The notes under the pieces were generated by a model, which saw only the letters and a program-made list of their open reading frames with translations, was not told the DNA's origin and did no database searches. This document shows positions 5,464 through 41,300 of a stretch of DNA of 49,458 bases, piece after piece (the stretch's first letter is position 1; every line of letters begins with the position of its first letter). The position numbers and the translations under genes are program-made. The DNA comes from Macrostomum lignano (Eukaryota), in NCBI GenBank assembly GCA_002269645.1, contig NIVC01004343.1, forward strand, positions 1 through 49,458. The letters run 5' to 3'.

Positions 5464-6167
5464 AACAATCGTTTTCGTTATGTGCTACTTAAAACAATAT
5501 ATTACTTCTAGATGCCTCTAATCTTCAAAATGACGTCACTTTCCGAAAACTTATCAATTCTGTCAGCCATTTTAACCTTAGAAAGTTCAATAAAACGGCT
5601 GCTAAGACTATCAACAATAAAATTATTGCGAACCCAACTCGCCGAACTTAGTCAATTCTGCGATCTAAATTGCATGCATGCATGCAAAAGCGACGAATTT
5701 CCGTCAGCTTAATCTGTCAACAAGCATCTGCTTGCGAAAAACTGCCGAGGTATGAGTAAACAAAAGAAATTGGACTCTCTATTTGACTCTGACTTTGTAT
5801 GAAATGCCTAATTGCTTATTATAGACACTGCAATGGTGAGCTTGTCAAATGTTGACTCAACGTTGATCAAACAATGCCTGACAATGATAGCAACTGCAGC
5901 TATATGCCCACTGTGCAAGAAAGTCTTGCGTATACAGATGCTCAGTCCCTTATTACACTCACTCATATAATGCATTAGTATTATTAATACTGGAACACAC
6001 ATAAGTATATAACTAGATTATTGGTTGCCTCACTTTTCGTGTAAGCTTACTTAATTTATCGTAATTATGATGAATTGTAAGTTAAAGCTAATTGTCGAAA
6101 GTGACGAAAATAACAAGCACAACAAAAGCAACAAAAGACGTAACCCAGAAAATTAAGATCAAACGGT

Positions 6168-6394
6168 CGTCAGATGAGGGTGCATCAGATGAGAGTGCGT
6201 CAGATGAGGGTGCGTCAGATGAGGGTGCGTCAGATGAGGGTGCGTCAGATGAGGGTGCGTCAGATGAGGGTGCGTCAGATGAGGGTGCGTCAGATGAGGG
6301 TGCGTCAGATGAGGGTGCGTCAGATGAGGGTGCGTCAGATGAGGGTGCGTCAGATGAGGGTGCGTCAGATGAGGGTGCGTCAGATGAGGGTGCG
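6168..6394. repeat. 15-bp tandem repeat (GTCAGATGAGGGTGC), about 15 copies
   Basis: Read directly; nearly homogeneous. Confidence 0.95.
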
Positions 6395-6757
6395 TTCACG
6401 TATCGACGAGTTCGCGCGTGGCCGTGCCTATATAGGCCGGTAGAAGTCAGAACAACCGCATAAGTGGTGAACGGGCTGGGTCCTCTAATACAGGGCCTCG
6501 GTCCCAACGCTCTCATCAGCTGGAAAAGACGCCGCCGGATGTCCTTCTCTACGTGAGGCACCAGAGCAACGAGGCAGATGAGCCGCTGGAAGCGAGTGAG
6601 CATGGTCTTCTGTACGTCTGCATGTTAGGTTCCTATTGGCACTTACTGAACCTCGACTTTGGCTGAATTGTACATGTAAATAAATAATTGATTACACCTG
6701 CCCATAGGGCCAGATGTGCAACCGACAGCTCAGCCGCAGCTATTGCGCGGCGCATCT

Positions 6758-6895
6758 GAAGGCTGCGTACGGCTGTTCAGTCCAAGGACTGGGGGTTGCC
6801 ACACACACCCTCAATTACCACCAACTAATGCTGGCACCCAATTTACAGATGAATGAACTGAAGCAAAGCAGAGTTAAGTGTCTTGCTTATTACAT
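6758..6895 (-). mobile_element. Second, partial copy of the SINE-like repeat at 3246..3470
   Basis: Shared GAAGGCTGC.TA.GGCTGTTCAGTCCAA.GACTGGGGG, CACCCTCAATTACC and GCAGAG.TAAGTGTCTTGCT blocks. Confidence 0.6.
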
Positions 6896-7139
6896 GTTAT
6901 TACATGTCGCTTGCGTTTTTTGATGGTCTCTAGGCTTGTGAGACTTAAGAGACGCTGCTGTTTTAATATTTGATCAGATAGATCAGTTTGAAAAGTTTTA
7001 TAAAATCTAGCTCTCATTGCAATCGAATTTCAAAAAGAGTCGTGAAGTTTGAAAAATAGTTCAAAGATTTGAATGAATTTAAAAATACATTTATAATGCA
7101 AATTCATGCAAAAACCATGACAGCAAAAAACGAATCTAA

Positions 7140-8795
7140 TTACAAATTTACGTCCAGACTGTACTTCAGCACAGCCTGCCAAAGTTTTACCCACAGGGAA
7201 TCGAAAAATGCGCTGTCAAAAGCCGTCAGAAAAATGTAATTGACGATGCCCTCAGAAGCCAGGCTGGGTACTATGGTTGTATATCCGTGACCTCTCCAAA
7301 ACCCTGCGATTGGAATGTCTAGCGAGGCTGCTAAAACTCCGGCCACGTAAACATCGTCAATCCAGAAGAACTGCTTGAACAGAGAGCACAGGTAGATGCT
7401 GGCGACGTGCTTGGCGTTGAGAATGTAGCCGAAGCCCTCGCAGTAGGTTGGGTAGAAACTGCCGGGAAACTCGTCGTAGCTTACCAACCATTTTGACATG
7501 TAAGGCAACGGAGATCTCTGCGGCTTGGCGCCTCGGGTGGCGGAGCAGTAGAAACTGGATGGAGCGCCCTGGCTCAAGAAGGTCGCCAAGTGTGCAACGT
7601 CCGTGAACGTGTCGTCGTCGACCTTGACGAGATACTTGGCCGACTGGCAGTGTCGCACGACCCACTCGTACACAGCCAGGTGCTTGATGCTCATGTTCCT
7701 GTAGTTCTCGGTGTAGTTCAGCTGCACGATGTCGCCGAACCGGTCGCTCTCCGCATCGATCAGAGCCTCGAGCTGCGCTCCGGTCGCTCCGGACTCGTCC
7801 GAGTCTCCCGACGCTGGCCGGCCGAGAAAGAAGGCCACCTCGATGCGGTACCGTCCGACGTACCTGAGCGATCCCCACGTTCTGCGGATGGTCGCTCGAC
7901 GACCGATGTTCTTCGCGTTGCTGTGAACCGCCACCAACGCCAGCAGGTCGCCCGCGGTGCACAGGTGATCCGCCATGCGCACAAAGTCGTAGGTTTGCAC
8001 GTAACGAAGTGCCGGACTCTGGAGGCCTCCGCACTTGCCGGCTGCGCTCTGCAGCTGCTGCTGGGTGACCGCCGAACCCAGCGACTTGAGTTTAGTCAGC
8101 AGCTTTGAGTACAGGCGCGAGTCGCTCGTTCGCTTAATTCGCTCCATGAGAGTTTGTGGCTCAATCGTTTTGTTTTGCTGCGGTTGTTGAGCTTCTATTT
8201 CTTTTGTTGGATTGACGCCTTCGTGTATTGTAGTTTCTTTGTGATCTTTCTGATCAGTGAATGAACCTTTTTGGAACTTTTTTACGTGTTCACGACCGTC
8301 ACTGCTTCCTTTTTGAGACTTCACATGGGCAACTGGGCCGTCGAATGGATCTTCAAGGATGAAATGTTTTCTATCAGCCAAAAAGTAACCTATGTGTTGG
8401 GAATCGGCCCTTGCTTCTTTAAACAAATCTTTTCCCATCTCGCCAGTAGTTTTTAGTGGCGGCTTGGGTTTTAAATTATCAAACCTTTTCGGTGGCTTGT
8501 TATAAGTGGTGCCACTGAGTTCAAGCTTCGGTTCTGCTGAAATGCTCTTTAATGATTTACCTTTGTTTAACGATGGTTCTGTCTCAATGACTGGAGCGCT
8601 GAATTGTTTTCTAGGCCGGCCAAGAAATAACTTGATTCCAAATGACAGCTGCGCAGACAGGGTCAGGGAAATCATTAACAGAAGAAGTAAGTTCCAATGT
8701 CGAAGGCTTAGCTGGAGCAGTAAAGCTGTCCATCGTTGCAGACGGTTGAGCATAGTGAACCGAGAAATAGCTGACACACTCTTTATAAGCTTCAT
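7140..8795 (-). CDS. GT31 family beta-1,3-galactosyltransferase-like protein, paralog A (551 aa, intronless, type II membrane protein)
   Basis: Intact ORF with an N-terminal hydrophobic anchor and long stem. Galactosyl_T motifs RATIRRTW, ESDRFGDIVQLNYTENYRNMSIK, KVDDD (DxD), YPTYCEGFGY and WIDDVYVAG. Confidence 0.9.
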   Translation of the reverse strand: MKLIKSVSAISRFTMLNRLQRWTALLLQLSLRHWNLLLLLMISLTLSAQLSFGIKLFLGRPRKQFSAPVIETEPSLNKGKSLKSISAEPKLELSGTTYNKPPKRFDNLKPKPPLKTTGEMGKDLFKEARADSQHIGYFLADRKHFILEDPFDGPVAHVKSQKGSSDGREHVKKFQKGSFTDQKDHKETTIHEGVNPTKEIEAQQPQQNKTIEPQTLMERIKRTSDSRLYSKLLTKLKSLGSAVTQQQLQSAAGKCGGLQSPALRYVQTYDFVRMADHLCTAGDLLALVAVHSNAKNIGRRATIRRTWGSLRYVGRYRIEVAFFLGRPASGDSDESGATGAQLEALIDAESDRFGDIVQLNYTENYRNMSIKHLAVYEWVVRHCQSAKYLVKVDDDTFTDVAHLATFLSQGAPSSFYCSATRGAKPQRSPLPYMSKWLVSYDEFPGSFYPTYCEGFGYILNAKHVASIYLCSLFKQFFWIDDVYVAGVLAASLDIPIAGFWRGHGYTTIVPSLASEGIVNYIFLTAFDSAFFDSLWVKLWQAVLKYSLDVNL

Positions 8796-9285
8796 TGGGC
8801 TCTACGAATCACTAAAAATCTTTTTCTACGCCTCTTTTTATACATCTTTTCTACCTTATGCTCAGCATTATTGTTTGGTTTAAGGTTCGCATTGTGAGCA
8901 AGAAATTTAGCCTCTGCTGTAGATTATTCTCAGACAGAGTTTCTGCACGCCAAGCGCTGGGTTCTATTCACCGTGCAAACCTCTCGAGTTCACTGGCTGT
9001 TGTCCACTGGTGACATAGTTTGTGTTCTCACTCTCTCAAGAGGCTGCATCTGAAGAGTTTGAAAACCTCAAGAGAGTTTTGGCCTTTATTTGATGACAGA
9101 AAATGTCTTATCTGTGAGATTATTATTAATTACGGCTTGTGCTTGAAGACAGTCAACTCATGTTTTGCGGAAAATGACTTGATTTTCCAGAGCTTTCAGA
9201 ATAATAGTTTGCAATAGCCGAGACTGAATATCAGCCTTTAAGTGAAGTAAGCAAAAATTGAACTTCTGCTCTTACTTTTACCTGC

Positions 9286-9660
9286 TTTCACACCCGCTGT
9301 CACTGTCTATGGCAAAACACCTTCATTTCCACTGACCAAGGAGTTCTATAATTAGCAACCTGGAGTGGAAACAAGTTTTTCAGCTTTACCTCGAGGCCAG
9401 ACTAGCATAAACAGAGTCGCACAGAGCCATAAGACATTCAGTGCTGGCTCCTTTTCTTTACAATTGGCGTGGCCTCATGAGGTAAAACTCGCTTTCACTC
9501 CAGATTGCTACTTATAGAACTCCTTGATTCCACCGACTGACTTCATTTCACACTCGCTGTCACTGTCTATGGCAAAACACTTTCATTTCCACTGACTAGG
9601 GAGTTCTATAATTAGCAACCTGGAGTGGAAACTAGTTTTTCAGCTTTACCTGGAGGCCAG
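9286..9660. repeat. Tandemly duplicated ~260-bp unit containing a ~185-bp MITE-like inverted-repeat element; the second copy is split by the Harbinger and resumes at 12914..13090
   Basis: Unit 1 is ~9286-9545; unit 2 is ~9546-9660 plus 12914-13055. Internal IR: GGAGTTCTATAATTAGCAACCTGGAGTGGAAAC (9340-9372) versus 9491-9523. Confidence 0.85.
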
Positions 9661-10494
9661 GGGGTCTTTCTTGAAAGCTACTTACGATCGGCCATAGACA
9701 TAAGTTGCGATAGTCGCACCTACGGTTTGCTCAAAAGAGTCGCAGGTTGACTTAGCGTAAGAGCGGTCGCAACTTTACGATCTCATAATTTTCCTCGACA
9801 GGCTGTTTCTCGAAACGATCGTATGTCTATGGTCTTTCGTAAGGTGGGTCGTAAATCTACGACTGCTCGAAACCGTCGTAAGAATCATTTTAATAGCTAC
9901 ACCATTTTACCCTCGATTTTGAACAAGGAGAACTTCGAAACCGACAAACTCCTCTTCAATATTGACACTCTATGGTCGGGCACTCAAAATCTACAATCAA
10001 TATTGACAGATCAAGCTTGAATTTTGACAAACTCTGGTTCAATTTTGACAAAACACATTTAGTCAACTTCTCCTGGGAGAAATCGGTAACAAAGTAATCC
10101 AATGAAAGCCTGAACGGAGCGAAAGTTATCTGTGCAAAATCAGCTCATTCTGACCTTGCTTTTGGGATCTACAAGTATTGATAAAATTTATTTTTCTCCA
10201 TCCTCTTACACACAGAGACTAAAATAGCCTGACTGGTTGGGCCGCAAAGTCGGATTCTATTTTGACAGAGTTGCTTCAAAACTGACACTTATGGTTTGTG
10301 TACCCCGAAAGTCCGCTTCATTTTTGACAACTCCTAATCAATATTGAACAGTTTACAATCAGTTTTGACTGCTACCTTATTACATCTGTTCTTCGTTGTG
10401 TATGTTTCAGAAAAAGCCATAAACACATAGCATTGTTAATGATTCAAAAGAAGTATTGTACTCATGTTTTTAAAAAGCACACATTTTTAGATTT

Positions 10495-10868
10495 CTAGAA
10501 TAGGTTAGATATCTGGACATGGGCGGCGAGAGCTTGCGACACCCCCTGCACGATTTCATGTTTCATGATAGCGACATGTGTGCAGTCGATAGCACCAGTG
10601 ACATGTGGCAGTCCGGCGATCAAATGGAATCCGGCCATGGTCTGATTAATTTCAACGTGGCTCCCAAGAAAACGTTCAAAATTTGACATGAGTCTCGTTC
10701 AAGTGTCACAATGTCCAAAATGATGACACGAGGAAATCGATAGCGGTCAATTAGTTCGGAATCGCGCATATACAACGGATCAGCATAATCCCGAAGTCGA
10801 CGATCGCGACCCACTGCACGTTCAGCAGCTCTCATCCGGAGTAGCGCAATCGCAAGCATGAAGTCCAT
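10495..10868 (-). pseudogene. Harbinger (HARBI1-like DDE) transposase, frameshifted and 3'-truncated
   Basis: RLRDYADPLYMRDSELIDRYRFPR and IAGLPHVTGAIDCTHVAI (first catalytic Asp motif) lie in different frames. The downstream DDE region is absent. Confidence 0.85.
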
Positions 10869-11448
10869 TTTCTCAGCTTCTTGAATACACGTATATGCTT
10901 CTATATACTACGCGGCACATATCGTCGGAAACGATACCACCATTGACCATAGACAAGTATTTTTTGCTTCCTGTCAACTTGCGACCTGCGTAAGTTGCGA
11001 GAACTCTAAGTTAGCTTCGAGAAACAGCTTTACGACCAATCTTACGGTGAGTGCAAAGTTCTGACTAACGACTACACTTACATAGAACTTACAATAGTTT
11101 CGAGAAAGACCCTCGGAGACCCTATGGTAAGTGCAGGCGTAAGTCCGAACTTTGCGCTTGGCGTAAGACCAGCTGTAAAGCTGTTTCTCGAAGCTAACCT
11201 AGGGTTCTCGCAACTTACGCAGTTCGCAAGTTATCGAGAAGCGAAAAATGTCGTCTATGGCCGAAGTGGGCAACGATTCCAATGGTTTTTGTCTGCTTCG
11301 GTATATATTCTTTTTGTACGTATATTTTCGGCATATATGATGCAATGGTCCGTAAGAAACATAAAGCAAAAGTGTCTTCAGGAAGGCAAACATATATTTA
11401 TTAGCTCGTACAAAATAGCAAATAATCTAGATAATAGCAAATAACAGT

Positions 11449-12584
11449 TTAATCAATTAGCTTCAACCAAGGCTCATCGAATTTTTTACTACAATCACTT
11501 GAAAAACACCACAACCCTCTCATCGATAATCTCCACCTTGTCGACAGAACGTTTTTTCTCAGCACGTGGTACAGCATCCTGACCTGTCGATCCAAGAGGT
11601 TCAAACGCGAACGTCTATCTGTTGAGAGCTGGAGACAACCATGCAGAGACAAAACAGTTCTAGGGATAGTGCCATCACTGAGGAGTCTCAGCCATAAGTC
11701 GAGCCTGGGAACTGGATGCCTTTATATGTCGTCCAGATTTCATTGTAAATCTTCAGCCGTCAGTATTATTATCAAGTGGTCTCGTAGGTGTGTCATCGTT
11801 ATTGACTCTTTTCGCATCTTGAGCTGGCTCCATATCCATAAATAATTGGTCGAACGACAAATCGATTTCGTCAAGACCGACGTACAGCACGAGTTGAAAA
11901 GTGGTTAAAGCCTGCTCCAGCTAGTCAGCTTGTATGTGTCTTAAGTAATTTTCCAATACTGTATACATTTGTATATGGCATTTGAAATTTTGGTAAGCGT
12001 CCTGCTCATTGAAATCCATGCAGTTTGGCGTAAGTGAAGTTTACATCAAGGACAACTTGATAACTCAGGACCGGAAACGAGCCAATTCAAAGCGAAAAAA
12101 GTATGAGGCTCGTTTAAAAGCATTGTTCTATGGCCCATCCGTATGCGCATGCTTTCAGTTGCCAATGCATACTCGTAAGTTGTCCTTGGTTTACATACTA
12201 TAATAGCATTATAATGCAATGTCTATGGCCAGAAAGTCCTCGGCCGCATTCAATGGTCCTCGGACTTTCTGACCACAGAATGGGCATTATAAAGTTATTA
12301 TCTTATACATATTGGTGCTTAAAATTAATTTCAAAGTTAATTAAATGGACTTCATAGCTCGTACTCGCTACTGTCCTACTGCGTCTGCATGTTGCTGACC
12401 GCGCATTGGGTCGAGATCGTACCCTTCGGGACCACGCTGGTCCTTGCATTATGCGCGATTCTGATCTGATCTGATAGCCTCCCAAACTGCTTTCTTTTTC
12501 CATTGCATCTCGACTTTTTGGTCTTTAGAATCTGATAGTATCGAGGTACTTGTTTACGTAATTCAACAACTCTTCCTTTTCTCC
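11449..12584 (-). pseudogene. Harbinger ORF2 Myb/SANT-like DNA-binding protein remnant
   Basis: MATKCQPNFSPGEKEELLNYVNKYLDTI, then after a frameshift KKKAVWEAI. A coiled-coil-like tail RRSRLNLLDRQVRML lies near 11600. The lower boundary is approximate. Confidence 0.7.
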
Positions 12585-14039
12585 AGGCGAGAAGTTGGGT
12601 TGGCACTTGGTCGCCATGGTCTTTGCTGCTGTCACTTGCAGTATTAAAGATATCGTACCCTGAGATCTCTTCGATAAGTGCTTCTCACGACTGATACCGA
12701 GCAGTCGTAGGGTTAAGATTAACCTTACGAAAGACCATAGACATACCAACGTTTCGAGAAACAGTCTTTTGCGCACAAAGTTACGAGCTCGCAAAGTTGC
12801 GATCGATCATAAGTCGTTTCAAGTTGCGAGACTTTCGAGCAAGCCAAGAGCACTTCCTCCCCAACTTACGTCTATGGTCCGATCGTAAGTTGCTTTCGAG
12901 AAAGACCCCCCAGACTAGCATAGACAGAGTCAGACAGAGCCATAGACATTAAGTGCTGGCTCCTTTTCTTTACAATTGGCGTGGCCTCATGAGGTAAAAC
13001 TCGCTTCCACTCCAGATTGCTACTTATAGAACTCCTTGCCACCGACTGACTTCATTTCACACCCCATCACTGTCTATGGCAAAAACACCTTTATTTTTAC
13101 CTATTTTACACCCGCCGTTACTGTCTACTACACAAACGGCTAGGCTTAAATCGGTACCTTTAAGTACTTTTTCTGCTTCCTTTTTGGTTCTTATTGTGTC
13201 CCATTTGGTGCCAATTTAGCCCAGTACGTAGAGTTCGCATTTACCATAGGCTAACAACTGAAATCGCCTGGAAATTCAGCTTTTTCGGTATCAAATTCGG
13301 GTTATTTCGTAGACATAAAACTCCTAAAACACCAGTCACGTATGCATTTGGTATCCTCTCTCTGTTTACCAGACTGATTCTATAACGTATAGTCCTCTTT
13401 GCACCATTATTTACTTTAGGCCTCCTTTACTTGTAAGTGTTCGCAGTTAAAACCAAATTGATTTCTGTTGTCTGTGGCTTTCTCTGGTTTGCTGACGTAA
13501 AATCTCTTCTAGGACGCTATAACGTCGAACTGCTGGGAGCCGCCCGATTTGAATGAATAAAAAACAAAAAGAACACGAAAGGTATACTGTCGGTGCATGC
13601 TAATGAGTTTAAGGCACAGACATTGGCATTTGGAAATCTCGCACATTCGTAGAGTAAAGATTAAAAATAAAATGCCAACTTCGCAGCTCTCAGTTGAAGC
13701 ATGCAATTATGCAGCTTCCCACGCATTTACCTTTTGACCATATAGACAGTGTATAGTTTGGTTTATAATTAGTGTATTTAAAATGCCAACTATAATAAAA
13801 ATGCTTTGTACAAATACATGTATGTTCCGGCTGAAGTATATTGTACATCTTTATTACAGCACTCTCTAGCCTGCCATAATGGCATTTAGCTTGCCTAATT
13901 AGCATTTCATATTGAATCTGATTGCTTAGCCATATTGGGATTTTTTTCAAATGAAATTTTGTAAAAATTGCGAATGAAAAATTTAATTTGAAGTTTTATA
14001 ATGAAGTTTAGTCTGGCATCCAACCATCTAGGAAGTAGG

Positions 14040-14308
14040 GGTAGGGGCGCGCACCAGACAGGGGCGCTCACCAAGAGATAGGGGCGTCCACCAGAGACAG
14101 GGGCGTCCACCAAGAGACAGGGGCGTCCACCAAGAGACAGGGGCGTCCACCAAGAGACAGGGGCGTCCACCAAGAGACAGGGGCGTCCACCAAGAGACAG
14201 GGGCGCCCTCTAAGAGACAGGGGCACCCACCGAGAGACAGGGGCACCCACCAAGAGACAGGGGCGCCCTCTAAGAGACAGGGGCACCTACCAAGAGACGG
14301 GGACGCCA
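14040..14308. repeat. 20-bp minisatellite (CCACCAAGAGACAGGGGCGT), about 13 copies
   Basis: Read directly. Confidence 0.95.
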
Positions 14309-14657
14309 TTAAACAAAACTTAACAGACTTAAAGTTTTTACTACCGAAAAAAGTCCATCGTTAAATAAAAGCGGAGGAGAAACAAGAAAGTTCTATTTGA
14401 CTTGAATTTTGCTCAAATCCATTGCTCAAAAACTGGTGGCTACTATACAGTACATATAAATGCGAGTAACTGAGGTGAGTCTTGCCCTTAACAAAATTGC
14501 CATCAAGTGCGTCTGAACGAGAGGGAGAGTCTATCGAAGTCAAGGGATAGGGATAGCGTACTCAAACGTGCTCAAAACAGCTGCATTTAGCTCGTAGAAC
14601 AATAGTGACTTTCAAAGTGCTTATTCGAGAGGCACGCAAGCTGCTTGCAGGGGAATT

Positions 14658-16207
14658 TTACAACGCCACATTAAGACTGTGCTGCAATACGGAACGCCAC
14701 AGTTTGTGCTGAACAACATCAAAAAAGTCGCTGCGCTCTGCGGTCAGAAAAATGTAGTCCACTATTGCTTCGGACGCAAGACTCGGCACCAAAGGGGCGT
14801 ATCCGTGACCTCTCCAGAACCCGGATATTGGGACACCCGTTGATGTTGCTAAAATTCCCGTAACGTAAACATCGTCAATCCAGAAGAACGGCTTGAACAG
14901 AGAGCACAGGTAGATGCTGGCGACGTGCTTAGCGTTGAGAATGTAGCCGAAGCCCTCGCAGTAGGTTGGGTAGAAACTGCCGGGAAACTCGCGATAACTA
15001 ACAGACCATTTTGCTTTGCGAGGAAATCTTTGTGGTCTCGCGCTTCTGGTGGCGGAGCAGTAGAAACCGGATGGAGCACCCTGGCTCAGGAAGGTCGCCA
15101 AGTGTGCAACGTCCGTGAACGTGTCGTCGTCGACCTTGACGAGATACTTGGCCGACTGGCAGTGTCGCACGACCCACTCGTACACAGCCAGGTGCTTGAT
15201 GCTCATGTTCCTGTAGTTCTCGGTGTAGTTCAGCTGCACGATGTCGCCGAACCGGTCGCTCTCCGCATCGATCAGAGCCTCGAGCTGCGCTCCGGTCGCT
15301 CCGGACTCGTCCGAGTCTCCCGACGCTGGCCGGCCGAGAAAGAAGGCCACCTCGATGCGGTACCGTCCGACGTACCTGAGTGATCCCCACGTTCTGCGGA
15401 TGGTCGCTCGACGACGAGGTTCTTCGCGTTGCTGTGAACCGCCACCAACGCCAGCAGGTCGCCCGCGGTGCACAGGTGATCCGCCATGCGCACAAAGTCG
15501 TAGGTTTGCACGTAACGAAGTGCCGGACTCTGGAGGCCTCCGCACTTGCCGGCTGCGCTCTGCAGCTGCTGCTGGGTGACCGCCGAACCCAGCGACTTGA
15601 GTTTAGTCAGCAGCTTTGAGTACAGGCGCGAGTCGCTCGCTCCCTCGATTCGCTCCATGATATTCAGGTCAACTAAGTTATCACTCGAAGGTTGAAGACT
15701 GGGATCGCTATATTTCTCTTCCATATTCTTGGCTGGATTTTCAATTCCTTGTTTAGGGAGAAGATTTCGGAATGGATTCTCAGAAATGAAACTGTCTCTT
15801 CCAGCTAGGTACTCGTTAGATAAAGGCTCGTCTGCAATGCCTTGTCTCAACGATTTGATTTTTCTAATCTTTGGTAGGCTAGACTTGAGCGCCGAGATGG
15901 GGCGCTGAATGCTTCTGACTTCAAGTTCAGCATTGCTGCTCAGCTCTAAACTAGGCTCACCATCCAAATTTCGAGCGTCTGGAAGCGAGCTGGCGCCGAC
16001 AACCTTTGGTACAAGCTGTTTTTCGTGACTCAACAGGCTGCTGCCACGAACTGTTAGCTGTAGAGTCACAGTGAGGTACAGCAGAAGTAGGATCAAGCAT
16101 GTCCATCGTCCCAGACTTATGTGCGTCGCCAGTCGGACTATCTTTAGTCGACGGTTCGAATTTGGCGCACCTTTTCCGCACGAAGATAGACCGCCGATGT
16201 GGTTCAT
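14658..16207 (-). CDS. GT31 paralog B, with a single 1-bp frameshift at ~15415 (pseudogene or sequence error)
   Basis: ORF 16207..15272 gives the TM segment, stem and start of the core; ORF 15545..14658 gives the rest of the core. Relative to A and C one C is missing (GCTCGACGAC-GAGG). No other lesions seen. Confidence 0.8.
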
Positions 16208-17213
16208 TGTATCCTTTCTGTTTAACAGTTAGCTAGTTTTATTTGTGCAACAGCCTTTACAGTTGAGCTGAAGTCGCACAATTTAAGTGTGTATATAGCT
16301 AGATCTACATGATCCTCGCTTCTATTTAAACTGCATTGTGCACGTTTCTTTAAAGAGACAATTGAGCTGACTGATGCTGCCTCAACTATGCTCGTATTTT
16401 ATGTACCTAGCTGGGCCGCAGAGCGAAAACCTGGGGTATATAATATGACCATAGACTGCGGCTTCTGCTGCTCTGACATGACCGCTTTGTTAGTGTCGGC
16501 TGCTAAATACATCAGCGAATGTGGAGCGACACATCTATGTAACAGAAATGCACAGCAACGTTGTTGGCTTTTAAAAGCTAAGATATTACGAGAAAAAAAT
16601 TGAAATAATTTGAAAGCGAATTGTGTATGCAAAAACTGCACCAAGAAGTGGTCGTAGGTACAGATACAGTTTTCCCTATGTACTCAATATGTACTCAGAA
16701 ACATTTGAAAAGTTGCCATGCACCCGTTGCGCCAGTAATCAACTTTTCTAGGATCTGCCTTGAAAGTTGCACAACTATATTAACACGCTGAGCAATGGGT
16801 GCATAAATACAAAAATAATGATAAAACCGTTTATTAGTTTCACGTACATAGTTGCAATGTTTGAGTTACGAGTACAATCTGTTTAATCTACAGAAGTTGC
16901 TGGGTTTTAATATTGCTGAGTATATTTGTGAAATATTGAGTTAGCTGATTTTATCAACCAATCTAACCTTTGATAAAATGCACGCATACAACACATGTAT
17001 ACATGTGCATACACTAGCGCTTTCGAAGGCTCAGAAGGTTACTAACTTTTAATCTACACTCAGAAACATATATATTAAAATTACAACCTCGAAACCAGTA
17101 GTCAACAATGACGAGGCTTTAATCCAACTGTAGTGACTATAAGGTTAATGGGAAAGTTAATATATTCTAGATCTTAGCATAAGTGTATCAGATGCTCACT
17201 ATATAAGCTCCCC

Positions 17214-17505
17214 GTTAAAAACGAGGGTTAATCTTGGAAGCAAAATAAACGAAAAGAAACTTTTGATTCGTTAATTTACCACAGTTTAACTTTCGAAAAA
17301 AGCGAATTTAGATTAGTTAAACACAGTCACTTTTGTAGGTTAATTTGGTTAACAAACTCGCAAATTAACGTAAATTTATCCTCCGTAAAGTAAATTAGTG
17401 GAAAACAACGTCAAGTAACGTTCATTTATCCTAAAATCGTGCTAATCGACCTTAGGCTATTAGTTATTTATTAACCCCCCCCCAATATTTACCCTCGTTT
17501 TCAAC
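17214..17505. mobile_element. Possible small MITE between GT31 B and C
   Basis: Imperfect 22-bp IR: GTTAAAAACGAGGGTTAATCTT versus AATATTTACCCTCGTTTTCAAC. No clear TSD. Confidence 0.4.
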
Positions 17506-18045
17506 AAGTCATTAACACTGCCGACAAATTAGACATCTATAATAACAGGAGTCAGGACCGATGTACTGAAAGGAATGAAAATTGCTGTACAAGTCTCGCG
17601 ATCACACTGGAAATTTGGTCGTATTTGATGGCGGTGTGACCTAGCCTTAAGCAAGCAACGCAAACTTTGTAATCGTACAACAAAATTCAGTAGCAAGACT
17701 TATTAAAAATGGAAAAAAAAATTAATTCATCAAAGGATAATTAAAAGGCTGCGGCCTCCGCCTCGAGTCCAATATATAAAAAAGACACAACTAGGCCGTG
17801 AATATACGACGTAGAAGCAATTACTTTTTGGTAGCAGCCAATGAACGAACGCTTCTAGAAATTTTGCGGCGCAAACTACTGCACACCACTAGCTAGCTAT
17901 TTGCATAAATAAGGCAGAAAAGAGAGTGTATTTTATTACATTACACAATTGCATAGTTAAAACTAAAAACATGTAGGTCGGGCTGCTTTCCGCAATCATT
18001 GCGTACAATAGAATATCTGATTTGAGGCACAATCTTAGGACAAGA

Positions 18046-19344
18046 ATGCTTCGGACGCTGACATTCAGTGAGAAACGATACTCTCGGCTGCTACTGCTGA
18101 TGCTGCTGTACACTGCGGTAACGCTTCAACTCTGCGTCACCGGCAGCAGCGTCTACGGCTCTTTGAAGGCCGCAGCTGATGCGCCCAAAACCAAGTCCAG
18201 AGTAGAAGCAGATTTAAAGACTGAACTTCTAATAAACAATAGTTTACCCGTTACCAACACAACGAAAAACAGGCTAAGTACTTTAAAGAAAACACAGAGA
18301 AAGCTGCACACGACCACAGCACCTCCGCTGACTTTGATGGAGCGAATTAAGCGAGCGAGCGACTCGCGCCTGTACTCAAAGCTGCTGACTAAACTCAAGT
18401 CGCTGGGTTCGGCGGTCACCCAGAAGCAGCTGCAGAGCGCAGCCGGCAAGTGCGGAGGCCTCCAGAGTCCGGCACTTCGTTACGTGCAAACCTACGACTT
18501 TGTGCACATGGCGGATCACCTGTGCACCGCGGGCGACCTGCTGGCATTGGTGGCGGTTCACAGCAACGCGAAGAACCTCGGTCGTCGAGCGACCATCCGC
18601 AGAACGTGGGGATCGCTCAGGTACGTCGGACGGTACCGCATCGAGGTGGCCTTCTTTCTCGGCCGGCCAGCGTCGGGAGACTCGGACGAGTCCGGAGCGA
18701 CCGGAGCGCAGCTCGAGGCTCTGCTCGATGCGGAGAGCGACCGGTTCGGCGACATCGTGCAGCTGAACTACACCGAGAACTACAGGAACATGAGCATCAA
18801 GCACCTGGCTGTGTACGAGTGGGTCCTGCGACACTGCCAGTCGGCCAAGTATCTCGTCAAGGTCGACGACGACACGTTCACGGACGTTGCACACTTGGCG
18901 ACCTTCTTGAGCCAGGGCGCTCCATCCAGTTTCTACTGCTCCGCCACCCGTGGCGCGAAGCCGCAGAGAATCGGCAGAGGCAGCATGGCTAAGTGGCTGG
19001 TTAAGAAGGTAGAGTTTCCTCAAAAATATTACCCAACCTACTGCGAGGGCTTCGGCTACATTCTCAACGCTAAGCACGTCGCCAGTATCTACCTGTGCTC
19101 TCTGTTCAAGCAGTTCTTCTGGATTGACGATGTTCACGTGACCGGCACTCTGGCAGCTTCGATGGGTGTCCCGATCGCCGGGTTCTGGAGAGGCCACGGA
19201 TACACCACTTTGGTCCCTAGTCTGGCCTCTGAAAGGATTATGGACTATATTTTCCTAACAGCTTATAAAAATGAATTTTTCGAAGGTCTCTGGATCAAGC
19301 TTTGGCATGTCGTTCTGCGAAACAGTCTGGATGTTAGTCTCTGA
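18046..19344 (+). CDS. GT31 paralog C (432 aa from the first ATG, intronless)
   Basis: Intact ORF. First ATG at 18046 (the track start at 18022 is TTG). TM segment LLLLMLLYTAVTLQLCV and the same GT31 motifs as A. Confidence 0.9.
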   Translation: MLRTLTFSEKRYSRLLLLMLLYTAVTLQLCVTGSSVYGSLKAAADAPKTKSRVEADLKTELLINNSLPVTNTTKNRLSTLKKTQRKLHTTTAPPLTLMERIKRASDSRLYSKLLTKLKSLGSAVTQKQLQSAAGKCGGLQSPALRYVQTYDFVHMADHLCTAGDLLALVAVHSNAKNLGRRATIRRTWGSLRYVGRYRIEVAFFLGRPASGDSDESGATGAQLEALLDAESDRFGDIVQLNYTENYRNMSIKHLAVYEWVLRHCQSAKYLVKVDDDTFTDVAHLATFLSQGAPSSFYCSATRGAKPQRIGRGSMAKWLVKKVEFPQKYYPTYCEGFGYILNAKHVASIYLCSLFKQFFWIDDVHVTGTLAASMGVPIAGFWRGHGYTTLVPSLASERIMDYIFLTAYKNEFFEGLWIKLWHVVLRNSLDVSL

Positions 19345-19607
19345 GCCGGAATGTTTGATCGTTAGCTTGTCGCTTTCACTAGGGGGTGTTTGTTTTTAAC
19401 TGCTAATCTGCTTTCCTAAATGTTTTTTTCACAAATACAAATTTCTACTCTTCAATGCTTTGCTTCGCAAAAACCGTTCTATGGTGCGGTCACTGCTGCT
19501 TGTCACTTGTTGTGCTCGTTTACTTATGGTTTTGTACTGCCATCAACAATCAATTCTCCGTGAGCCTTGGTATTCTCTAATCCTGGATCCTTATTGATCG
19601 TTTTTTA

Positions 19608-19722
<115 letters not shown>

Positions 19723-22379
19723 ATGAGAAATGTTGCCGCTGGCATATCCAGCTCCTTTGTGCTGATGTCTATGGCCGAATGATCAACTTGCTTGCTTTTT
19801 CCGTCTATGTCTATGGGCAAGACCAAATCTACTGCTGCTAAATGGCGATCCTCTGCAGTTTGGTTGAGTTGTCTATCTGCTTGACTGACAATAGGCTCGA
19901 AGCAATAGTTAGAAATGTTATAGTTGCTGATTTTTAATGGACTTATTATCGATTGGACAAAATCGAAAGTTCTAAGATATAATTAGCTATGCAGAATTAG
20001 ACTTTTGCATTTCTACGTACCTGAAGCTAATCACAAATTGCTAATCCCCTACCTGCACTTGTACTATTTAAAAGTGCAAGGTCGTCTCTGTAAATTTGTA
20101 CTTTTAAATCCCAATCCTTTTTGGTGCAATTACAGCATAGCTAATTCCATTAACAAAACCCTAAGAGTGAACCTCAGAAAACCACATCGTACCAAAGTAA
20201 AATTAGCTATGCATATAGTTCTATTGCAACTGGCACGCAAACATTGAACTGCTTGTTCCTAAACACTTAAGAACTTTGACCCGTGCGATAATCATCAGAT
20301 TTTATATGGCATATTAAATACGTTTGCAGATTAATTCAGACTGTGTCACTCTGAGTGTCACTCATTCGGGTCTAATTGACAAATTTTGATGCAGCAAGCT
20401 GGTATATGCGATCCGTACTCTACAGGTAGGACCGTTTTGAAACAAGATTTTTCTACAATTAATGTTAAATGAAGTCAGGTAGAGTTCCAGTAAAACAAAG
20501 AGAGAAAAGAGAACAGAGAAGATTAGAGAGCAGAGATCAAACTGAGAAGATACTCAAAACCTGAGCTGGCCGGATTGCTATTGTGAAGTTTCAAAGGACT
20601 CGATCGGGTCAGATAGAGAGACTTGGTTGGCAGGAGATATTCTCAGTTGTGCGGTATATCAGTAAGCGTTTATGCTGACAATAGCTTGAATAAGTTGCGC
20701 AAAACATTAAAACACAGGTTATATTTGAGCTTATTCTAATGAATTAGATAGCAAATTTATTACGATATCTTTTATTTACAACGTGATCACTCAAATTCGT
20801 CGTATTTAGGGAATTAGGGTGTCACTGGGAAGGTGATGCTGATACCTTTAGGCTAGATGGCCGGCTTTCAGGCTTCCAAATTTGGCTCGTTGCTTTTAAC
20901 GTCCTTAATCTGGAAAAAATGAACAAATTTGCGCCTGTATAAGGCTTTTTACAAGCACTGTTTATTCCCTTTTTGAATTTAATTGCCTTCACAATGGGGG
21001 GCAGAGACAGTTATATTCAGATTTTGTATTCAGTTGGTTCATCGATTTCCCATGCGATTTGCGAGAGAATCCTGCACAGTCACGTGTCAAATTTATGGTC
21101 AGACAAAGTGCGCCTAATTAATGATTAATTTACGAGTACTTAGTATTTTTAAGAGAACAGTTGAAAAGCACCACCACTATTGCTGCATTGCATTGTATAT
21201 AGGCCACAAATTGTTGCGATATCTCGTAAAGGCTCTCGCTCTCTCTCCCGTCAGATATCACCTCAGAGTCCCGGTTATAAATAAATCACCTTACTATGTC
21301 TAGAGTATATATAGCTATATAATATATATACTGCACCTCCCAACCCAGTGAGGTCTACTGTAATTCATCACTGACTTAGTCAGGAATCCATTTAGTTAGT
21401 CTTAAAAGAGGGCGCTATCTCCAGATTACGGATAAAATTGACTACTTTTCAGCGGTGAAAATAACGTAATGAAGAGTCTACAATATATCCTACCAGTATA
21501 TATAGCTGCACTACACTACTGCGCATAAAGCTTATTTGCCTAAATTTCGACTTTTTTGTCAACCAAAGTTATCGATGGGCTACCGTGAGAGAGACTTTTC
21601 GTTGCCCCTATGACTACCGGGTATACCGCGCTTAAAAAAGATACACAGAGTATCACATTCGATTCTAACGAATTCCGACATAGAACCCCGCTGCATGGTT
21701 AGTTATAGTGGATAGTGGATTATGTGGAACGATGTCGTCAAAGACGTTTGAATAACTTGTATATTAAATTACTAATAACCTGTGCTTTCTCTATTCAATA
21801 GCATACCAAATGAACAGTATAATTACTAAAGATAAATTTACAGGCAAACAATTAACCAGAGAAATTGTTTATGCTAAAAAACACTCAATACAAGCATTTC
21901 CAACACACATACACGCATAATGTGAGACAGGCCAAATCTGCGCAAAAGAAATACTTCGTAGTTCTAAACTATGCATAGGCACTAATTGCCAGTCGAGAGA
22001 AGCAACAAAATTATAAAAGTTGTGTCGAATAAGCTCGCATTACATGTATGTATGGAAATACAACACTAATAATTAATACATGACATCCTGACTGCATCAC
22101 GTGGTTGCACCCTGCCAAGTGATGGGAGATCTATATAATAGCTCTGTCCATATTCCCTGAAAACTACTACCATATTTTCCCACTAATCTGACTAACAATA
22201 TTATTAACCATTTCCCTACCCATAGTAACATTTTGCACTTAGTAAACTTACATATTAAAAACGTTTATAAGCATTTGCATCCCACATTTGCTTGTACGCA
22301 GACACGCACTCGCACACACCCTCACACAGGGTCTACAGCGGTCCTTTGACTTTGTAATCGTCAGATTTGTACACATTAT

Positions 22380-22850
22380 TTAGAGATCCCTGTAGGATAG
22401 AAGGTTAATTCAGAGATCCCTGTAGGATAGAAGGTTAATTCAGAGATCCCTGTAGGATAGAAGGTTAATTCAGAGATCCCTGTAGGACAGAAGGTTAATT
22501 CAGAGATCCCTGTAGGACAGAAGGTTAATTCAGGGATCCCTGTAGGACAGAAGGTTAATTCAGAGATCCCTGTAGGACAGAAGGTTAATTCAGAGATTCC
22601 TGTAGGACAGAAGGTTAATTCAGGGATCCCTGTAGGACAGAAGGTTAATTCAGAGATCCCTGTAGGACAGAAGGTTAATTCAGAGATTCCTGTAGGATGG
22701 AAGGTTAATTCAGAGATCCCTGTAGGACAGAAGGTTAATTCAGAGATCCCTGTAGGACAGAAGGTTAATTCAGAGATCCCTGTAGGATGGAAGGTTAATT
22801 CAGAGATCCCTGTAGGACAGAAGGTTAATTCAGAGGTCCCTGTAGACGGA
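22380..22850. repeat. 30-bp minisatellite (CAGAGATCCCTGTAGGACAGAAGGTTAATT), about 15 copies
   Basis: Read directly. Confidence 0.97.
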
Positions 22851-34993: not shown

Positions 34994-35052
<59 letters not shown>

Positions 35053-35059
35053 GTGTATG

Positions 35060-35098
<39 letters not shown>

Positions 35099-35466
35099 GT
35101 GTATGTGTCTGTCTGTGTGTTATGTGTCTGTCTGTGTGTATGTGTCTGTCTGTGTGTATGTGTCTGTCTGTCTGTCTATATGTGTCTGTCTGTCTGTCTG
35201 TCTGTCTGTCTTGTGTGTATGTGTCTGTCTGTCTGTCTATATGTGTCTGTCTGTCTGTCTGTCTGTGTGTATGTCTCTGTCTGTGTGTATGTCTGTCTGT
35301 GTGTCTGTCTTAGTGTCTGTCTGTCTGTCTTGTGTGTATGTGTCTGTCTGTCTGTCTATGTGTCTGTCTGTCTGTCTGTCTGTCTGTGTGTATGTCTCTG
35401 TCTGTGTGTACGTCTCTGTCTGTGTGTATGTCTCTGTCTGTGTGTATGTGTCTGTCTGTCTATATG

Positions 35467-35505
<39 letters not shown>

Positions 35506-36050
35506 GTGTCTGTCTTAGTGTCTGTCTGTCTGTCTGTCTTGTGTGTATGTGTCTGTCTGTCTGTCTATATGTGTCTGTCTGTCTGTCTGTCTGTCTGTGT
35601 GTATGTCTCTGTCTGTGTGTATGTGTCTGTCTGTCTATATGTGTCTGTCTGTCTGTGTGTATGTCTGTCTGTCTGTGTGTATGTGTCTGTCTGTCATAAT
35701 GTATGTCTATTTATATGTCTGTCTCCCTGTCTTTATGTATGTTTGTCCGTATCTGCCTATCTTCATTAGTGTCTGTCTGTCTATATGTGTCTGTCTGTCT
35801 GTCTGTCTGTGTGTATGTCTCTGTCTGTGTGTATGTGTCTGTCTGTCTATATGTGTCTGTCTGTCTGTCTGTCTGTCTGTGTGTCTGTCTTAGTGTCTGT
35901 CTGTCTGTCTGTCTTGTGTGTATGTGTCTGTCTGTCTGTCTATGTGTCTGTCTGTCTGTCTGTCTGTCTGTGTGTATGTCTCTGTCTGTGTGTACGTCTC
36001 TGTCTGTGTGTATGTCTCTGTCTGTGTGTATGTGTCTGTCTGTCTATATG

Positions 36051-36097
<47 letters not shown>

Positions 36098-39657: not shown

Positions 39658-39884
39658 ATTTGTTTTGCAGCTGTTCAAGGACTTTTATAAACTAATTATC
39701 TGTTGGACTAGATGGGATGCGAGAGCTGCAACTGGGGGCATATTGAATAAATTTATAAATTTAATATACCTGATAAGAAATAGATTCTTATCAAAGAAGT
39801 GTTTACAATTGACTATTTTTAATTTGCTTGCAGCTACTAGAAGGCTGTTGTACACAAATATAAGTAAGCTACATACAAAATAAC

Positions 39885-41164: not shown

Positions 41165-41300
41165 AATGATGCTTGCTATCTAGGGGATGCTTGCTATTTG
41201 GGGGATGGTTGCTATTTGGATGATGCTTGCTATCTGGGTGGATGCTTGCTATCAAGATGATGCTTGCTATCTGAGGGATGCTTACTATCTGTGGGATGTT
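41165..41300. repeat. Degenerate ~20-bp tandem repeat (GATGCTTGCTATCT core)
   Basis: About 6 imperfect copies. Confidence 0.7.

What the first reader, a model, noticed from the sequence alone, without database searches (positions are those of the whole stretch)
7140..19344. Three GT31 paralogs with a mosaic architecture: near-identical cores, unrelated stems (patchwork gene conversion)
Seen: A (~8150-7520), B (~15660-15048) and C (~18335-18968) share a ~610-630-bp block (MERI..SDSRLYSKLL to FYCSAT) that is almost identical even at third codon positions. A second ~120-bp block (YPTYCEGFG..WIDDV) is also shared. The TM/stem regions cannot be aligned at DNA level, and the C-termini are protein-similar but heavily changed at synonymous sites. 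The shared blocks are visibly GC-richer, with C/G-ending codons, than the stems. A few private substitutions (NIG/NLG, LID/LLD, VVRH/VLRH) argue against simple assembly collapse. Inference: old paralogs are continually homogenised over the catalytic core (GC-biased gene conversion) while the localisation and specificity modules stay divergent, which would make this a modular glycan-diversification locus.
Basis: partly seen in the sequence, partly recalled or inferred. Interest (0 to 1): 0.75.

Follow-up and report, generated by a model that had tools for sequence, protein, structure and literature searches.

The report
Gene-converted glycosyltransferase paralogs in a flatworm
Three old, neighbouring sugar-transferase genes of the flatworm Macrostomum lignano keep about 720 bases of their catalytic domain almost identical by copying it between one another, while the stems, one active-site loop and the C-terminal ends stay very different; this is a clean example of a well-known process, not a new one.

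Summary
The window is Macrostomum lignano DNA. It carries three intronless GT31 (PF01762) genes: A 7140-8795(-), B 14658-16207(-) and C 18046-19344(+).

- **Identity pattern.** Two blocks are 98-99% identical among the three genes: 612 nt (MERI..FYCSAT) and 105 nt (YPTYC..WIDDV). Synonymous divergence (dS) is 0.007-0.10 in the blocks. It is saturated in the stems, in the 75-81-nt segment between the blocks, and in the last 69 codons.
- **Control.** Against a fourth paralog, D, the same core has dS about 1.3, so synonymous constraint does not explain the identity.
- **Trees.** In a second, homeologous copy of the cluster (L001), stems, linker and C-termini group by paralog (100% bootstrap). The core groups by locus (93%). 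Site incompatibilities need at least 6 exchange events. Recurrent ectopic gene conversion is therefore well supported.
- **GC bias.** GC3 rises to 0.81 exactly inside the tracts, against 0.37-0.56 outside. GC-biased conversion is still not demonstrated, because D has GC3 of about 0.9 over its whole catalytic domain.
- **Unconverted island.** It maps to the β6-β7 lid loop (the acceptor-binding loop, HV2) of the GT-A fold. A role in specificity is plausible but untested.
B carries a 1-nt frameshift in this window, and it is intact in a public contig of the same locus.

This is a new member of a known kind and of modest interest.

The parts
7140..8795 (-). Gene A: intronless GT31 hexosyltransferase, 551 aa. 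It has an N-terminal hydrophobic anchor (aa 36-54) and a long stem of about 160 aa.
   Evidence: ORF. PF01762 E=4.7e-39. The CDS is 100% identical in NIVC01004159.1 and 99.4% in NIVC01004610.1, where the annotated protein is P0002. Kyte-Doolittle peak 2.05.
8148..8795 (-). A stem module (cytoplasmic tail, membrane anchor, stem), specific to this paralog.
   Evidence: 37-43% nt identity to the B and C stems and 95% to the homeolog A_L1. GC3 0.39.
7536..8147 (-). A core block 1 (MERI..FYCSAT, 204 codons): the homogenised tract. It holds the donor-binding half of the domain and the DDD motif.
   Evidence: dS to B is 0.027 and to C 0.007. 9 and 7 differences in 612 nt. GC3 0.81.
7455..7535 (-). 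A linker: an unconverted island of 27 codons, the middle of the β6-β7 lid loop (HV2).
   Evidence: 29-43% nt difference to B and C, and 97% identity to A_L1. Aligns to the K172-T217 loop of β3GalT5 (PMC11969544).
7350..7454 (-). A core block 2 (YPTYCEGFGY..WIDDV, 35 codons): the G-loop and the catalytic-base motif.
   Evidence: 2/105 differences to B and to C, against 24/105 to paralog D (p=3e-6).
7143..7349 (-). A C-terminal module (69 codons), unconverted.
   Evidence: pS 0.76-0.77 and dN 0.21-0.27 to B and C. Groups by paralog with 100% bootstrap.
14658..16207 (-). Gene B: GT31 paralog, 516 aa when intact. In this window it is split by a 1-nt deletion at 15414.
   Evidence: Two overlapping ORFs, 15272-16207 and 14658-15545. 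The intact 516-aa versions are P0025 in L004 (same locus) and P0003 in L001. The indel is localised.
15048..15658 (-). B core block 1 (611 nt because of the deletion).
14973..15047 (-). B linker (25 codons, 2 codons shorter than in A and C), unconverted.
   Evidence: GC3 0.36.
14868..14972 (-). B core block 2.
14661..14867 (-). B C-terminal module, unconverted.
18046..19344 (+). Gene C: GT31 paralog, 432 aa counted from the ATG at 18046 (the listed ORF starts at a TTG at 18022). It has a short stem and lies head-to-head with B.
   Evidence: ORF. PF01762 E=2.4e-37. P0001 is 94% identical and starts at the equivalent ATG. The AF2 model has pLDDT 80.6 and its best PDB match is β3GalT5, TM 0.87.
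18337..18948 (+). C core block 1. It begins at the first residue of the predicted folded domain (aa 98).
18949..19029 (+). C linker (27 codons), unconverted. It is a loop between strands 296-301 and 332-341 in the model.
19030..19134 (+). C core block 2.
19135..19341 (+). C C-terminal module, unconverted.

Best explanation
A, B and C are ancient tandem paralogs of a flatworm β1,3-glycosyltransferase (CAZy GT31). A and B are direct repeats 7.5 kb apart, and C is inverted, head-to-head with B. In the stems, the lid-loop linker and the C-termini they are as diverged from one another as from a fourth, unlinked paralog D. Recurrent non-reciprocal exchange (ectopic gene conversion during repair of DNA breaks, using a neighbouring paralog as template) keeps two tracts almost identical: 612 nt covering the N-terminal helices, the nucleotide-sugar-binding half and the DDD motif, and 105 nt covering the G-loop and the catalytic-base motif.

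Shown here: a 50-fold or greater drop of dS inside the tracts, the tree conflict between tracts and flanks, and the patchwork of shared variants.

Inferred, not shown:
- The high identity of the tracts makes further conversion easy, while 30-48% divergence and indels in the flanks stop heteroduplex extension. This would keep the borders sharp and identical in both homeologous loci.
- Mismatch repair biased towards G/C (gBGC) holds GC3 at about 0.8 inside the tracts.
- Selection removes conversions that overwrite the paralog-specific lid loop (HV2) and C-terminal part. The three enzymes would then share donor and chemistry but differ in acceptor recognition and in stem length.
For: - **Family.** PF01762 at E 1e-37 to 1e-40. 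The DDD motif, the xED-type base and the KW of the lid loop align to human β3GalT5. The model matches 8zwp with TM 0.87.
- **Old paralogs.** C-terminal differences are 66-74/207 among A, B and C, against 74-81/207 to D. Linker differences are 22-36 of 75-81, against 36-39 to D. pS is 0.69-0.90.
- **Homogenised tracts.** Core1 dS is 0.007-0.034 in the window and 0.020-0.041 in L001. Core1 dS to D is 1.32-1.35, so the region has no intrinsic synonymous constraint. Fisher p down to 1e-50.
- **Recurrent, and later than the split of the homeologous loci.** Stem, linker and C-terminus group by paralog (98.5-100% bootstrap). Core1 groups A_L1+B_L1+C_L1 at 93%. Two sites are fixed differences between the loci across all three paralogs. 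Only 2 of 16 informative sites follow paralogy. 47 of 120 site pairs fail the four-gamete test, giving Rm>=6.
- **Very recent exchange.** A_w and A_L2 differ by 10 nt, 6 of them in core1. At 3 of those 6 sites one of the two alleles is carried by only one of the window's B and C, and at a fourth A alone departs from all other copies.
- **Not produced by one assembly step.** The same mosaic is present in three separate contigs of GCA_002269645.1 (L001, L002, L004) and in the window. Variants shared only within a locus cannot come from locus-blind read mis-mapping.
- **GC3.** It follows the tract borders.
Against: - No raw reads, no population data and no second species were available. Single-site 'patchwork' calls could partly be short-read polishing cross-talk between 98%-identical copies.
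- The classical GENECONV-type permutation on polymorphic sites is significant only for A/B (p=0.0016). A/C and B/C are not significant, because all three genes are homogenised together and few polymorphic sites remain.
- gBGC: paralog D has GC3 0.87-1.0 across core, linker and C-terminus (0.69 in its stem). High GC3 may therefore be ancestral. The S>W excess among private changes is marginal.
- Nothing here separates selection from a mechanical divergence barrier as the cause of the unconverted island.
Confidence: 0.85

Rival explanations
1. A single recent event, rather than continual homogenisation: one conversion or chimeric duplication pasted the same core into three old genes.
For: Core identity is high and fairly even (98-99%). 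The tract borders are the same in both homeologous loci, as expected if the mosaic was created once before the loci separated.
Against: The cores group by locus, not by paralog, after the loci split (93% bootstrap). Variants specific to one locus are shared by all three paralogs. Rm>=6. Within-locus paralog dS (0.007-0.041) is at or below homeolog dS (0.034-0.063).
Confidence: 0.08
2. Assembly or polishing artefact: the cores were made alike by collapse or by mis-mapped reads during consensus correction.
For: The window differs from NIVC01004159.1 only by indels and repeat-length changes, including a 1-nt deletion inside B's core. Consensus errors therefore do exist in this region. M. lignano assemblies are known to be hard because of paralogous blocks (PMC10733133).
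Against: Polishing cannot turn about 35% divergence into 1-2% over 612 nt with sharp in-frame borders. The same mosaic appears in three separate contigs representing at least two diverged loci. Variants shared within one locus, and private variants, persist. Each gene is embedded in unique flanks that long reads would span.
Confidence: 0.03
3. Constraint rather than exchange: the core is kept identical by selection on the nucleotide sequence itself, such as codon usage, RNA structure or an overlapping element.
For: Core GC3 is high. Long alternative-frame ORFs overlap the core. Core2 has reduced dS even against D (0.30-0.45).
Against: The same core1 codons have dS 1.3 and 39% nt difference against paralog D. 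Alternative-frame ORFs are expected in 62% GC sequence. Constraint cannot make cores group by locus.
Confidence: 0.02
4. Conversion is real, but the unconverted linker and C-terminus are only mechanical leftovers. Once diverged, with indels, they block heteroduplex, and no selection for distinct specificity is involved.
For: The linker differs by 29-48% and has a 6-nt indel in B. Paralog dN/dS in the C-terminus is well below 1. No sign of positive selection was found. Identical borders in both loci fit a barrier as well as they fit selection.
Against: The island is flanked on both sides by converted sequence. The 3' block is only 105-129 nt, short for independent initiation, which suggests that tracts crossing the island arise and are lost. 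The island coincides with the β6-β7 lid loop (HV2) that forms the acceptor cleft in β3GalT5 (PMC11969544, PMC7185993). This is the 'peak of divergence' pattern predicted for selected differences under conversion (PMC3924837).
Confidence: 0.4

Closest known systems
Concerted evolution by ectopic (interlocus) gene conversion with a 'peak of divergence' (Teshima & Innan model). Textbook cases are the human red/green opsins, RHD/RHCE, the fetal globins and Hsp70.
   Same: Old duplicates with near-identical tracts, sharp borders and tree conflict between tract and flank. An internal island of high divergence sits at functionally discriminating residues (review PMC3924837).
   Different: Here there are three genes in mixed orientation, intronless, in a neopolyploid flatworm with further homeologous copies of the whole cluster. 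The converted part is the donor and catalytic half of a glycosyltransferase. Selection on the island is inferred, not shown.
Human β3GalT5 and B3GNT2 (CAZy GT31, GT-A fold; PDB 8zwp, 6wmm, 7jhi).
   Same: PF01762 domain, DxD motif (DDD), xED-type catalytic Asp, KW in the long β6-β7 lid loop, and predicted fold with TM 0.87 to 8zwp.
   Different: Only 21-24% identity over the structural match. There is an extra helical N-terminal extension of about 50 aa (MERI..LRYVQ) shared with paralog D. Donor and acceptor are unknown.
Loci with variable first exons and shared constant exons (UGT1A, GCNT2; PMC1885805).
   Same: Functional analogy only: several enzymes share one constant module and differ in a variable module.
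   Different: In those loci the constant part is physically one set of exons joined by splicing. Here each gene carries its own copy, kept constant by conversion.
GC-biased gene conversion in multigene families (mammalian histones and Hsp70; ectopic conversion in yeast and Arabidopsis). Cited from general knowledge, not read here.
   Same: GC3 is raised specifically in the converted tracts.
   Different: Direction of change could not be polarised. An unconverted paralog (D) is even more GC3-rich.

Membership tests
CAZy GT31 / Pfam PF01762 β1,3-glycosyltransferase | Match to the family profile above the curated cut-off | tested here: met
   129-137 bits against a cut-off of 23 for A, C and the 3' ORF of B. 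PDB sequence hits are β3GalT5 at 1e-25 and B3GNT2 at 1e-16.
CAZy GT31 / Pfam PF01762 β1,3-glycosyltransferase | DxD metal and donor motif and xED-type catalytic base in register with solved enzymes | tested here: met
   KVDDDTF aligns to TDSDMF (D156-D158), and WIDDV aligns to LEDV (E242/D243) of β3GalT5 (residue roles from PMC11969544). D274-D276 are invariant across 23 homologs.
CAZy GT31 / Pfam PF01762 β1,3-glycosyltransferase | GT-A fold | tested here: met
   AF2 model with pLDDT 80.6. Foldseek top hits are 8zwp (E 9e-21, TM 0.87) and B3GNT2.
CAZy GT31 / Pfam PF01762 β1,3-glycosyltransferase | Type II membrane topology (N-terminal signal anchor plus stem) | tested here: inconclusive
   There is one N-terminal hydrophobic 19-mer per protein (Kyte-Doolittle mean 1.96-2.05), followed by a low-confidence stem. 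No dedicated topology predictor was available.
CAZy GT31 / Pfam PF01762 β1,3-glycosyltransferase | β1,3 transfer of Gal, GlcNAc or GalNAc to a defined acceptor | not testable with these tools
   Needs enzyme assays.
Ectopic gene conversion / concerted evolution | Synonymous divergence in the tract far below that of flanking homologous sequence | tested here: met
   dS 0.007-0.10 against saturated values. Third-position differences 1-3% against 51-59%.
Ectopic gene conversion / concerted evolution | Tree conflict: the tract groups by locus or species, the flanks by paralog | tested here: met
   Tested across two homeologous loci, not across species. Flanks group by paralog at 98.5-100%. Core1 groups {A,B,C}_L1 at 93%.
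Ectopic gene conversion / concerted evolution | Mosaic of incompatible sites and significant fragment tests | tested here: met
   47/120 site pairs incompatible, Rm>=6. All-site run permutation p<=0.0005 for all pairs. The polymorphic-site (GENECONV-like) test is significant only for A/B, p=0.0016.
Ectopic gene conversion / concerted evolution | The pattern holds in raw reads | not testable with these tools
   No read data. Indirect support comes from three contigs plus the window.
GC-biased gene conversion | GC3 raised inside the tracts relative to adjacent coding sequence | tested here: met
   0.80-0.82 against 0.48-0.56 (p 1e-5 to 1e-9) and against stems 0.37-0.55.
GC-biased gene conversion | Excess of W>S fixed changes in the tracts, with new mutations S>W biased | tested here: inconclusive
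   Private changes are 14 S>W to 3 W>S (p=0.056 against composition). Fixed changes could not be polarised. Outgroup D has GC3 0.87-1.0 across core, linker and C-terminus and 0.69 in its stem.
Selected 'peak of divergence' under conversion (Teshima-Innan) | Island of high divergence flanked on both sides by homogenised sequence | tested here: met
   The linker of 75-81 nt differs by 29-48% and lies between blocks that differ by 1-2%.
Selected 'peak of divergence' under conversion (Teshima-Innan) | The island holds residues that make the paralogs functionally different | not testable with these tools
   By homology it is the middle of the β6-β7 lid loop (HV2) that forms the acceptor cleft (PMC11969544, PMC7185993). 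Function was not assayed.

The most novel reading that the evidence does not exclude
The cluster may work as a 'constant module plus variable cassettes' system maintained by recombination rather than by splicing. Gene conversion would force all copies (three per locus, with at least two further homeologous loci seen, one only in part) to share one donor-binding and catalytic module. Selection would protect paralog-specific lid loops (HV2), C-terminal parts (HV3) and stems. An improvement in the catalytic module would then spread to all acceptor specificities at once.
Probability: 0.3. Interest if true: 0.5.

Novelty: new member of a known kind. Interest (0 to 1): 0.35.

Why it matters
- **Teaching and modelling case.** It is an unusually clean case of domain-restricted concerted evolution: dS is 50-fold or more lower inside the tracts, the borders are resolved to within one or two 30-nt windows, and the internal unconverted island coincides with a known acceptor-recognition loop of the GT-A fold.
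- **Annotation and phylogeny.** Trees or duplication dates built from the catalytic domain of these genes will be badly wrong. The core looks younger than the homeolog split, while the flanks are as old as the split from paralog D.
- **M. lignano genomics.** 98%-identical 0.6-kb segments in the three paralogs at each locus are a trap for short-read mapping and polishing. The frameshift in B is a likely example.
- **Glycobiology.** Whether the locus diversifies glycans remains to be tested.

Tried and rejected
- **Classical GENECONV-style permutation** on sites polymorphic among A, B and C has little power here, because all three genes are homogenised together. Only A/B reached p=0.0016. I replaced it with all-site run permutation, Fisher tests, region trees and four-gamete/Rm analysis.
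- **Cross-species test.** The protein search returned only the M. lignano A, B, C and D clusters, plus one D-like Logan fragment, above 50% identity. No orthologs from other Macrostomum species were available, so I used the homeologous locus L001 instead.
- **Independent read or transcript evidence.** Exact-protein look-ups for the window's A and C found no record. No paper mentions the gene identifiers.
- **External GC-rich donor for the core.** No further paralog exists in the annotated proteome. D's core is only 46-69% identical at protein level. Rejected.
- **Alternative-frame ORFs inside the cores** (for example 7357-8034, 18376-19197). Treated as by-products of 62% GC, not as genes.
- **Transposon between A and B.** ORF fragments at 10495-10868(-) looked like a PIF/Harbinger (HARBI1-like) transposase from memory, but Pfam gave no hit. 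Left as unverified.
- **The 2202-aa ORF over the 30-nt satellite** (24639-31247). Judged a frame-preserving minisatellite rather than a gene. It has about 210 copies here against about 20 in L001, and no gene is called there in the public annotation.

Full report
**Source and genes.**
- The best protein matches are Macrostomum lignano hexosyltransferases.
- Window 5450-22845 is 99.74% identical to NIVC01004159.1 of assembly GCA_002269645.1 (locus L004). There are no substitutions outside simple repeats and 11 indels.
- The region holds three intronless genes of Pfam family PF01762 (E 1e-37 to 1e-40): A 7140-8795(-), 551 aa; B 14658-16207(-); and C 18046-19344(+), 432 aa.
- A and B are direct repeats 7.5 kb apart. 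C is inverted, with its start 1.8 kb from B's start.
- B is split into two ORFs in this window by a 1-nt deletion at 15414. The same gene is an intact 516-aa ORF in L004 (P0025) and in the homeologous locus L001 (P0003). The frameshift is therefore most likely a consensus error, or a very recent private change.

- The repeat finder reports the shared block at 96-98% identity between all pairs and the 3' ends at 76-80%.
- In a codon alignment the high-identity tracts are A 8147-7534 / C 18337-18950 (653 nt, 7 mismatches) and A 8128-7578 / B 15639-15090 (590 nt, 2 mismatches). A second block is A 7473-7345 / B 14991-14863 and C 19030-19134.
- Identity in 30-nt windows switches from 33-50% to 87-100% within one or two windows at each border.
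- Differences are 1.3-2.0% in the blocks and 34-37% in linker plus C-terminus (p down to 1e-50). At third positions they are 1.3-2.1% against 55-59%.
- The stems are unalignable, at 37-43%.

**Divergence along the genes.** Nei-Gojobori estimates:

| Region | Among A, B, C in the window | Notes |
|---|---|---|
| Core1 (204 codons) | dS 0.007-0.034 | 0.020-0.041 in L001 |
| Core2 (35 codons) | dS 0.05-0.10 | |
| Stem, linker, C-terminus | pS 0.69-0.90 (saturated) | dN 0.18-0.27 in the C-terminus |

- A fourth paralog D (P0004; L003) serves as the control. It has one phase-0 intron after ..DIVQ, inside what is the 'core' in A, B and C.
- Core1 against D has dS 1.32-1.35 and 39% nt difference. The region therefore has no intrinsic synonymous constraint.
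- In the C-terminus, A, B and C differ from one another (66-74/207) about as much as from D (74-81/207). The four genes are of similar, old age.
- Core2 has 2/105 differences among A, B and C, against 24-26/105 to D (p about 1e-6).

**Tracts and flanks have different histories.**
- M. lignano is a neopolyploid for which three homeologous subgenomes have been proposed (PMC10733133).
- I recovered a syntenic second copy of the cluster, L001 (NIVC01001957.1). It carries A', B' and C' in the same order and orientation and is 85-95% identical to the window.
- I also recovered a third, partial copy, L002, about 99% identical.
- Neighbour-joining trees with bootstrap group stem, linker and C-terminus strictly by paralog (98.5-100%). 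Core1 groups A', B' and C' of L001 together at 93%.
- Of 16 informative core sites, only 2 follow paralogy. Two are fixed differences between the loci shared by all three paralogs. The others join A with C at the tract ends and A with B in the middle (alignment columns 890-1210).
- 47 of 120 site pairs fail the four-gamete test, and at least 6 exchanges are needed.
- Within-locus paralog dS in the core (0.007-0.041) is at or below homeolog dS (0.034-0.063).
- A_w and A_L2 differ at 10 sites, 6 of them in core1. At 3 of those 6 sites one of the two alleles is carried by only one of the window's B and C, and at a fourth A alone departs from all other copies.
- Together these results show recurrent exchange that continued after the loci separated.

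**Artefact.**
- Polishing cannot create 98% identity from about 35% divergence over 612 in-frame nucleotides.
- The mosaic is present in three separate public contigs and in the window.
- Locus-blind read mis-mapping would not produce variants shared only within one locus.
- Individual shared SNVs could still be polishing cross-talk. Raw reads were not available.

**GC content.**
- GC3 is 0.80-0.82 in the tracts, 0.48-0.56 in linker plus C-terminus and 0.37-0.55 in stems. The steps lie at the tract borders; in B, for example, GC3 runs 0.73, 0.15, 0.87, 0.40 along the gene.
- Intergenic GC here is 0.37-0.42.
- This is what GC-biased conversion predicts, because unbiased conversion would not alter the composition of the tract.
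- Paralog D has GC3 0.87-1.0 across core, linker and C-terminus and 0.69 in its stem, in a locus of GC about 0.52. High GC3 may therefore be ancestral and simply better retained in the tracts.
- Private changes in the cores are 14 S>W to 3 W>S, only marginally more than composition predicts (p=0.056).
- The bias is an association, not a demonstration.

**What the modules are.**
- The closest solved proteins are human β3GalT5 (E 1e-25) and B3GNT2.
- An AlphaFold2 model of C (pLDDT 80.6) has a disordered stem (residues 39-86). Its folded domain starts at residue 97-98, exactly where core1 starts (MERI). It matches 8zwp with TM 0.87.
- By alignment, core1 contains the Rossmann-like donor-binding half and the DDD motif (D156-D158 in β3GalT5).
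- Core2 contains the YPxYCxGxGY G-loop region, which aligns with the terminal-sugar contacts Y210, F213 and S215. It also contains the catalytic base in WIDDV (D243).
- The unconverted linker is the middle of the long β6-β7 loop (K172-T217), around the conserved KW (K197/W198). In β3GalT5 this loop closes over the donor and forms the acceptor cleft (PMC11969544).
- In the general GT-A scheme this loop is hypervariable region HV2 and the C-terminal tail is HV3. Both are associated with acceptor specificity, while donor specificity sits in the common core (PMC7185993).
- HV1 (the ASGDSDESGATGAQ insertion) lies inside core1 and is homogenised.
- The three enzymes thus very probably share donor and chemistry. 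They differ in stem length (about 55, 135 and 165 residues between anchor and domain), in the lid loop and in the C-terminal part.
- Whether selection maintains these differences, or a divergence barrier alone does, cannot be decided here. An island of divergence between two converted blocks is the signature described for selected differences under conversion (PMC3924837).

**Comparison and verdict.**
- Mechanistically this is ordinary ectopic gene conversion with concerted evolution of part of a gene, as in the opsins, RH, the globins and Hsp70. I found no earlier description for M. lignano or for these genes.
- It is a new, very clean member of a known kind.
The GC-bias and 'modular diversification' parts remain inference.
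- Interest is modest (0.35). The practical consequences are for dating, for phylogeny and for read mapping in this neopolyploid genome.

Noticed in passing
window 15414 (gene B): A 1-nt deletion relative to NIVC01004159.1 frameshifts B at the NLG codon inside the converted core. The public contig and the homeologous locus both have an intact 516-aa ORF. It is one of five single-base indels between the two otherwise identical sequences.
   Followed up: yes
window 24669-30979: A 30-nt minisatellite of about 210 copies (96% matches) with extreme strand skew (GC skew about -0.48, AT skew about +0.53). It keeps one frame open for 2202 codons (repeat [10 protein letters not shown]). The homeologous locus L001 has only about 20 copies (16014-16614), and no gene is called there. 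It is probably non-coding, but a Thr/Ser-rich repeat next to glycosyltransferases is worth a look.
   Followed up: partly
window 6088-6603 (-), repeat 6168-6395: The ORF holds a 15-nt tandem repeat encoding (APSSD)n, followed by a C-terminal hydrophobic segment. Pfam hits to DUF1180/FAM174-like (E=0.002) and Extensin-like (E=0.008) are weak and below cut-off. It could be a small Ser-rich single-pass membrane protein just downstream of gene A.
   Followed up: partly
L003 10799-11561 and L005 3802-4631: The unlinked paralog D (P0004/P0026) has one phase-0 intron after ..RDIVQ, a position that lies inside the converted core of A, B and C. A, B and C have no intron. This points to intron loss or a retrocopy origin of the A/B/C ancestor.
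   Followed up: partly
window 9286-9660, 9789-9869, 10959-11249, 12698-13038: A nest of direct and inverted repeats lies between A and B: 95-115-nt copies at 88-98% and a 123-nt-arm hairpin. ORF fragments at 10495-10868(-) recall PIF/Harbinger transposases but gave no Pfam hit. This stretch is absent or different in L001 and partly different in L002.
   Followed up: partly
window 14056-14307 and 19610-19720: A 20-nt tandem repeat (12.6 copies) lies a few hundred bases 3' of B. An (AG)55 microsatellite lies about 270 nt 3' of C, and its length differs between the window and NIVC01004159.1.
   Followed up: no
window 8147, 15658, 18337: In all three genes the converted block begins at an in-frame ATG (MERI..). 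This is also the first residue of the predicted folded domain. Paralog D has no Met there.
   Followed up: partly
window 31394-44662: The right half of the window is mostly satellites: 22/44-nt CT-rich, 23-nt, (CTGT)n, 23-nt, 31/62-nt and a 23-nt array of 98 copies at 42424-44662. GC drops to about 0.32 from 40 kb onwards.
   Followed up: no
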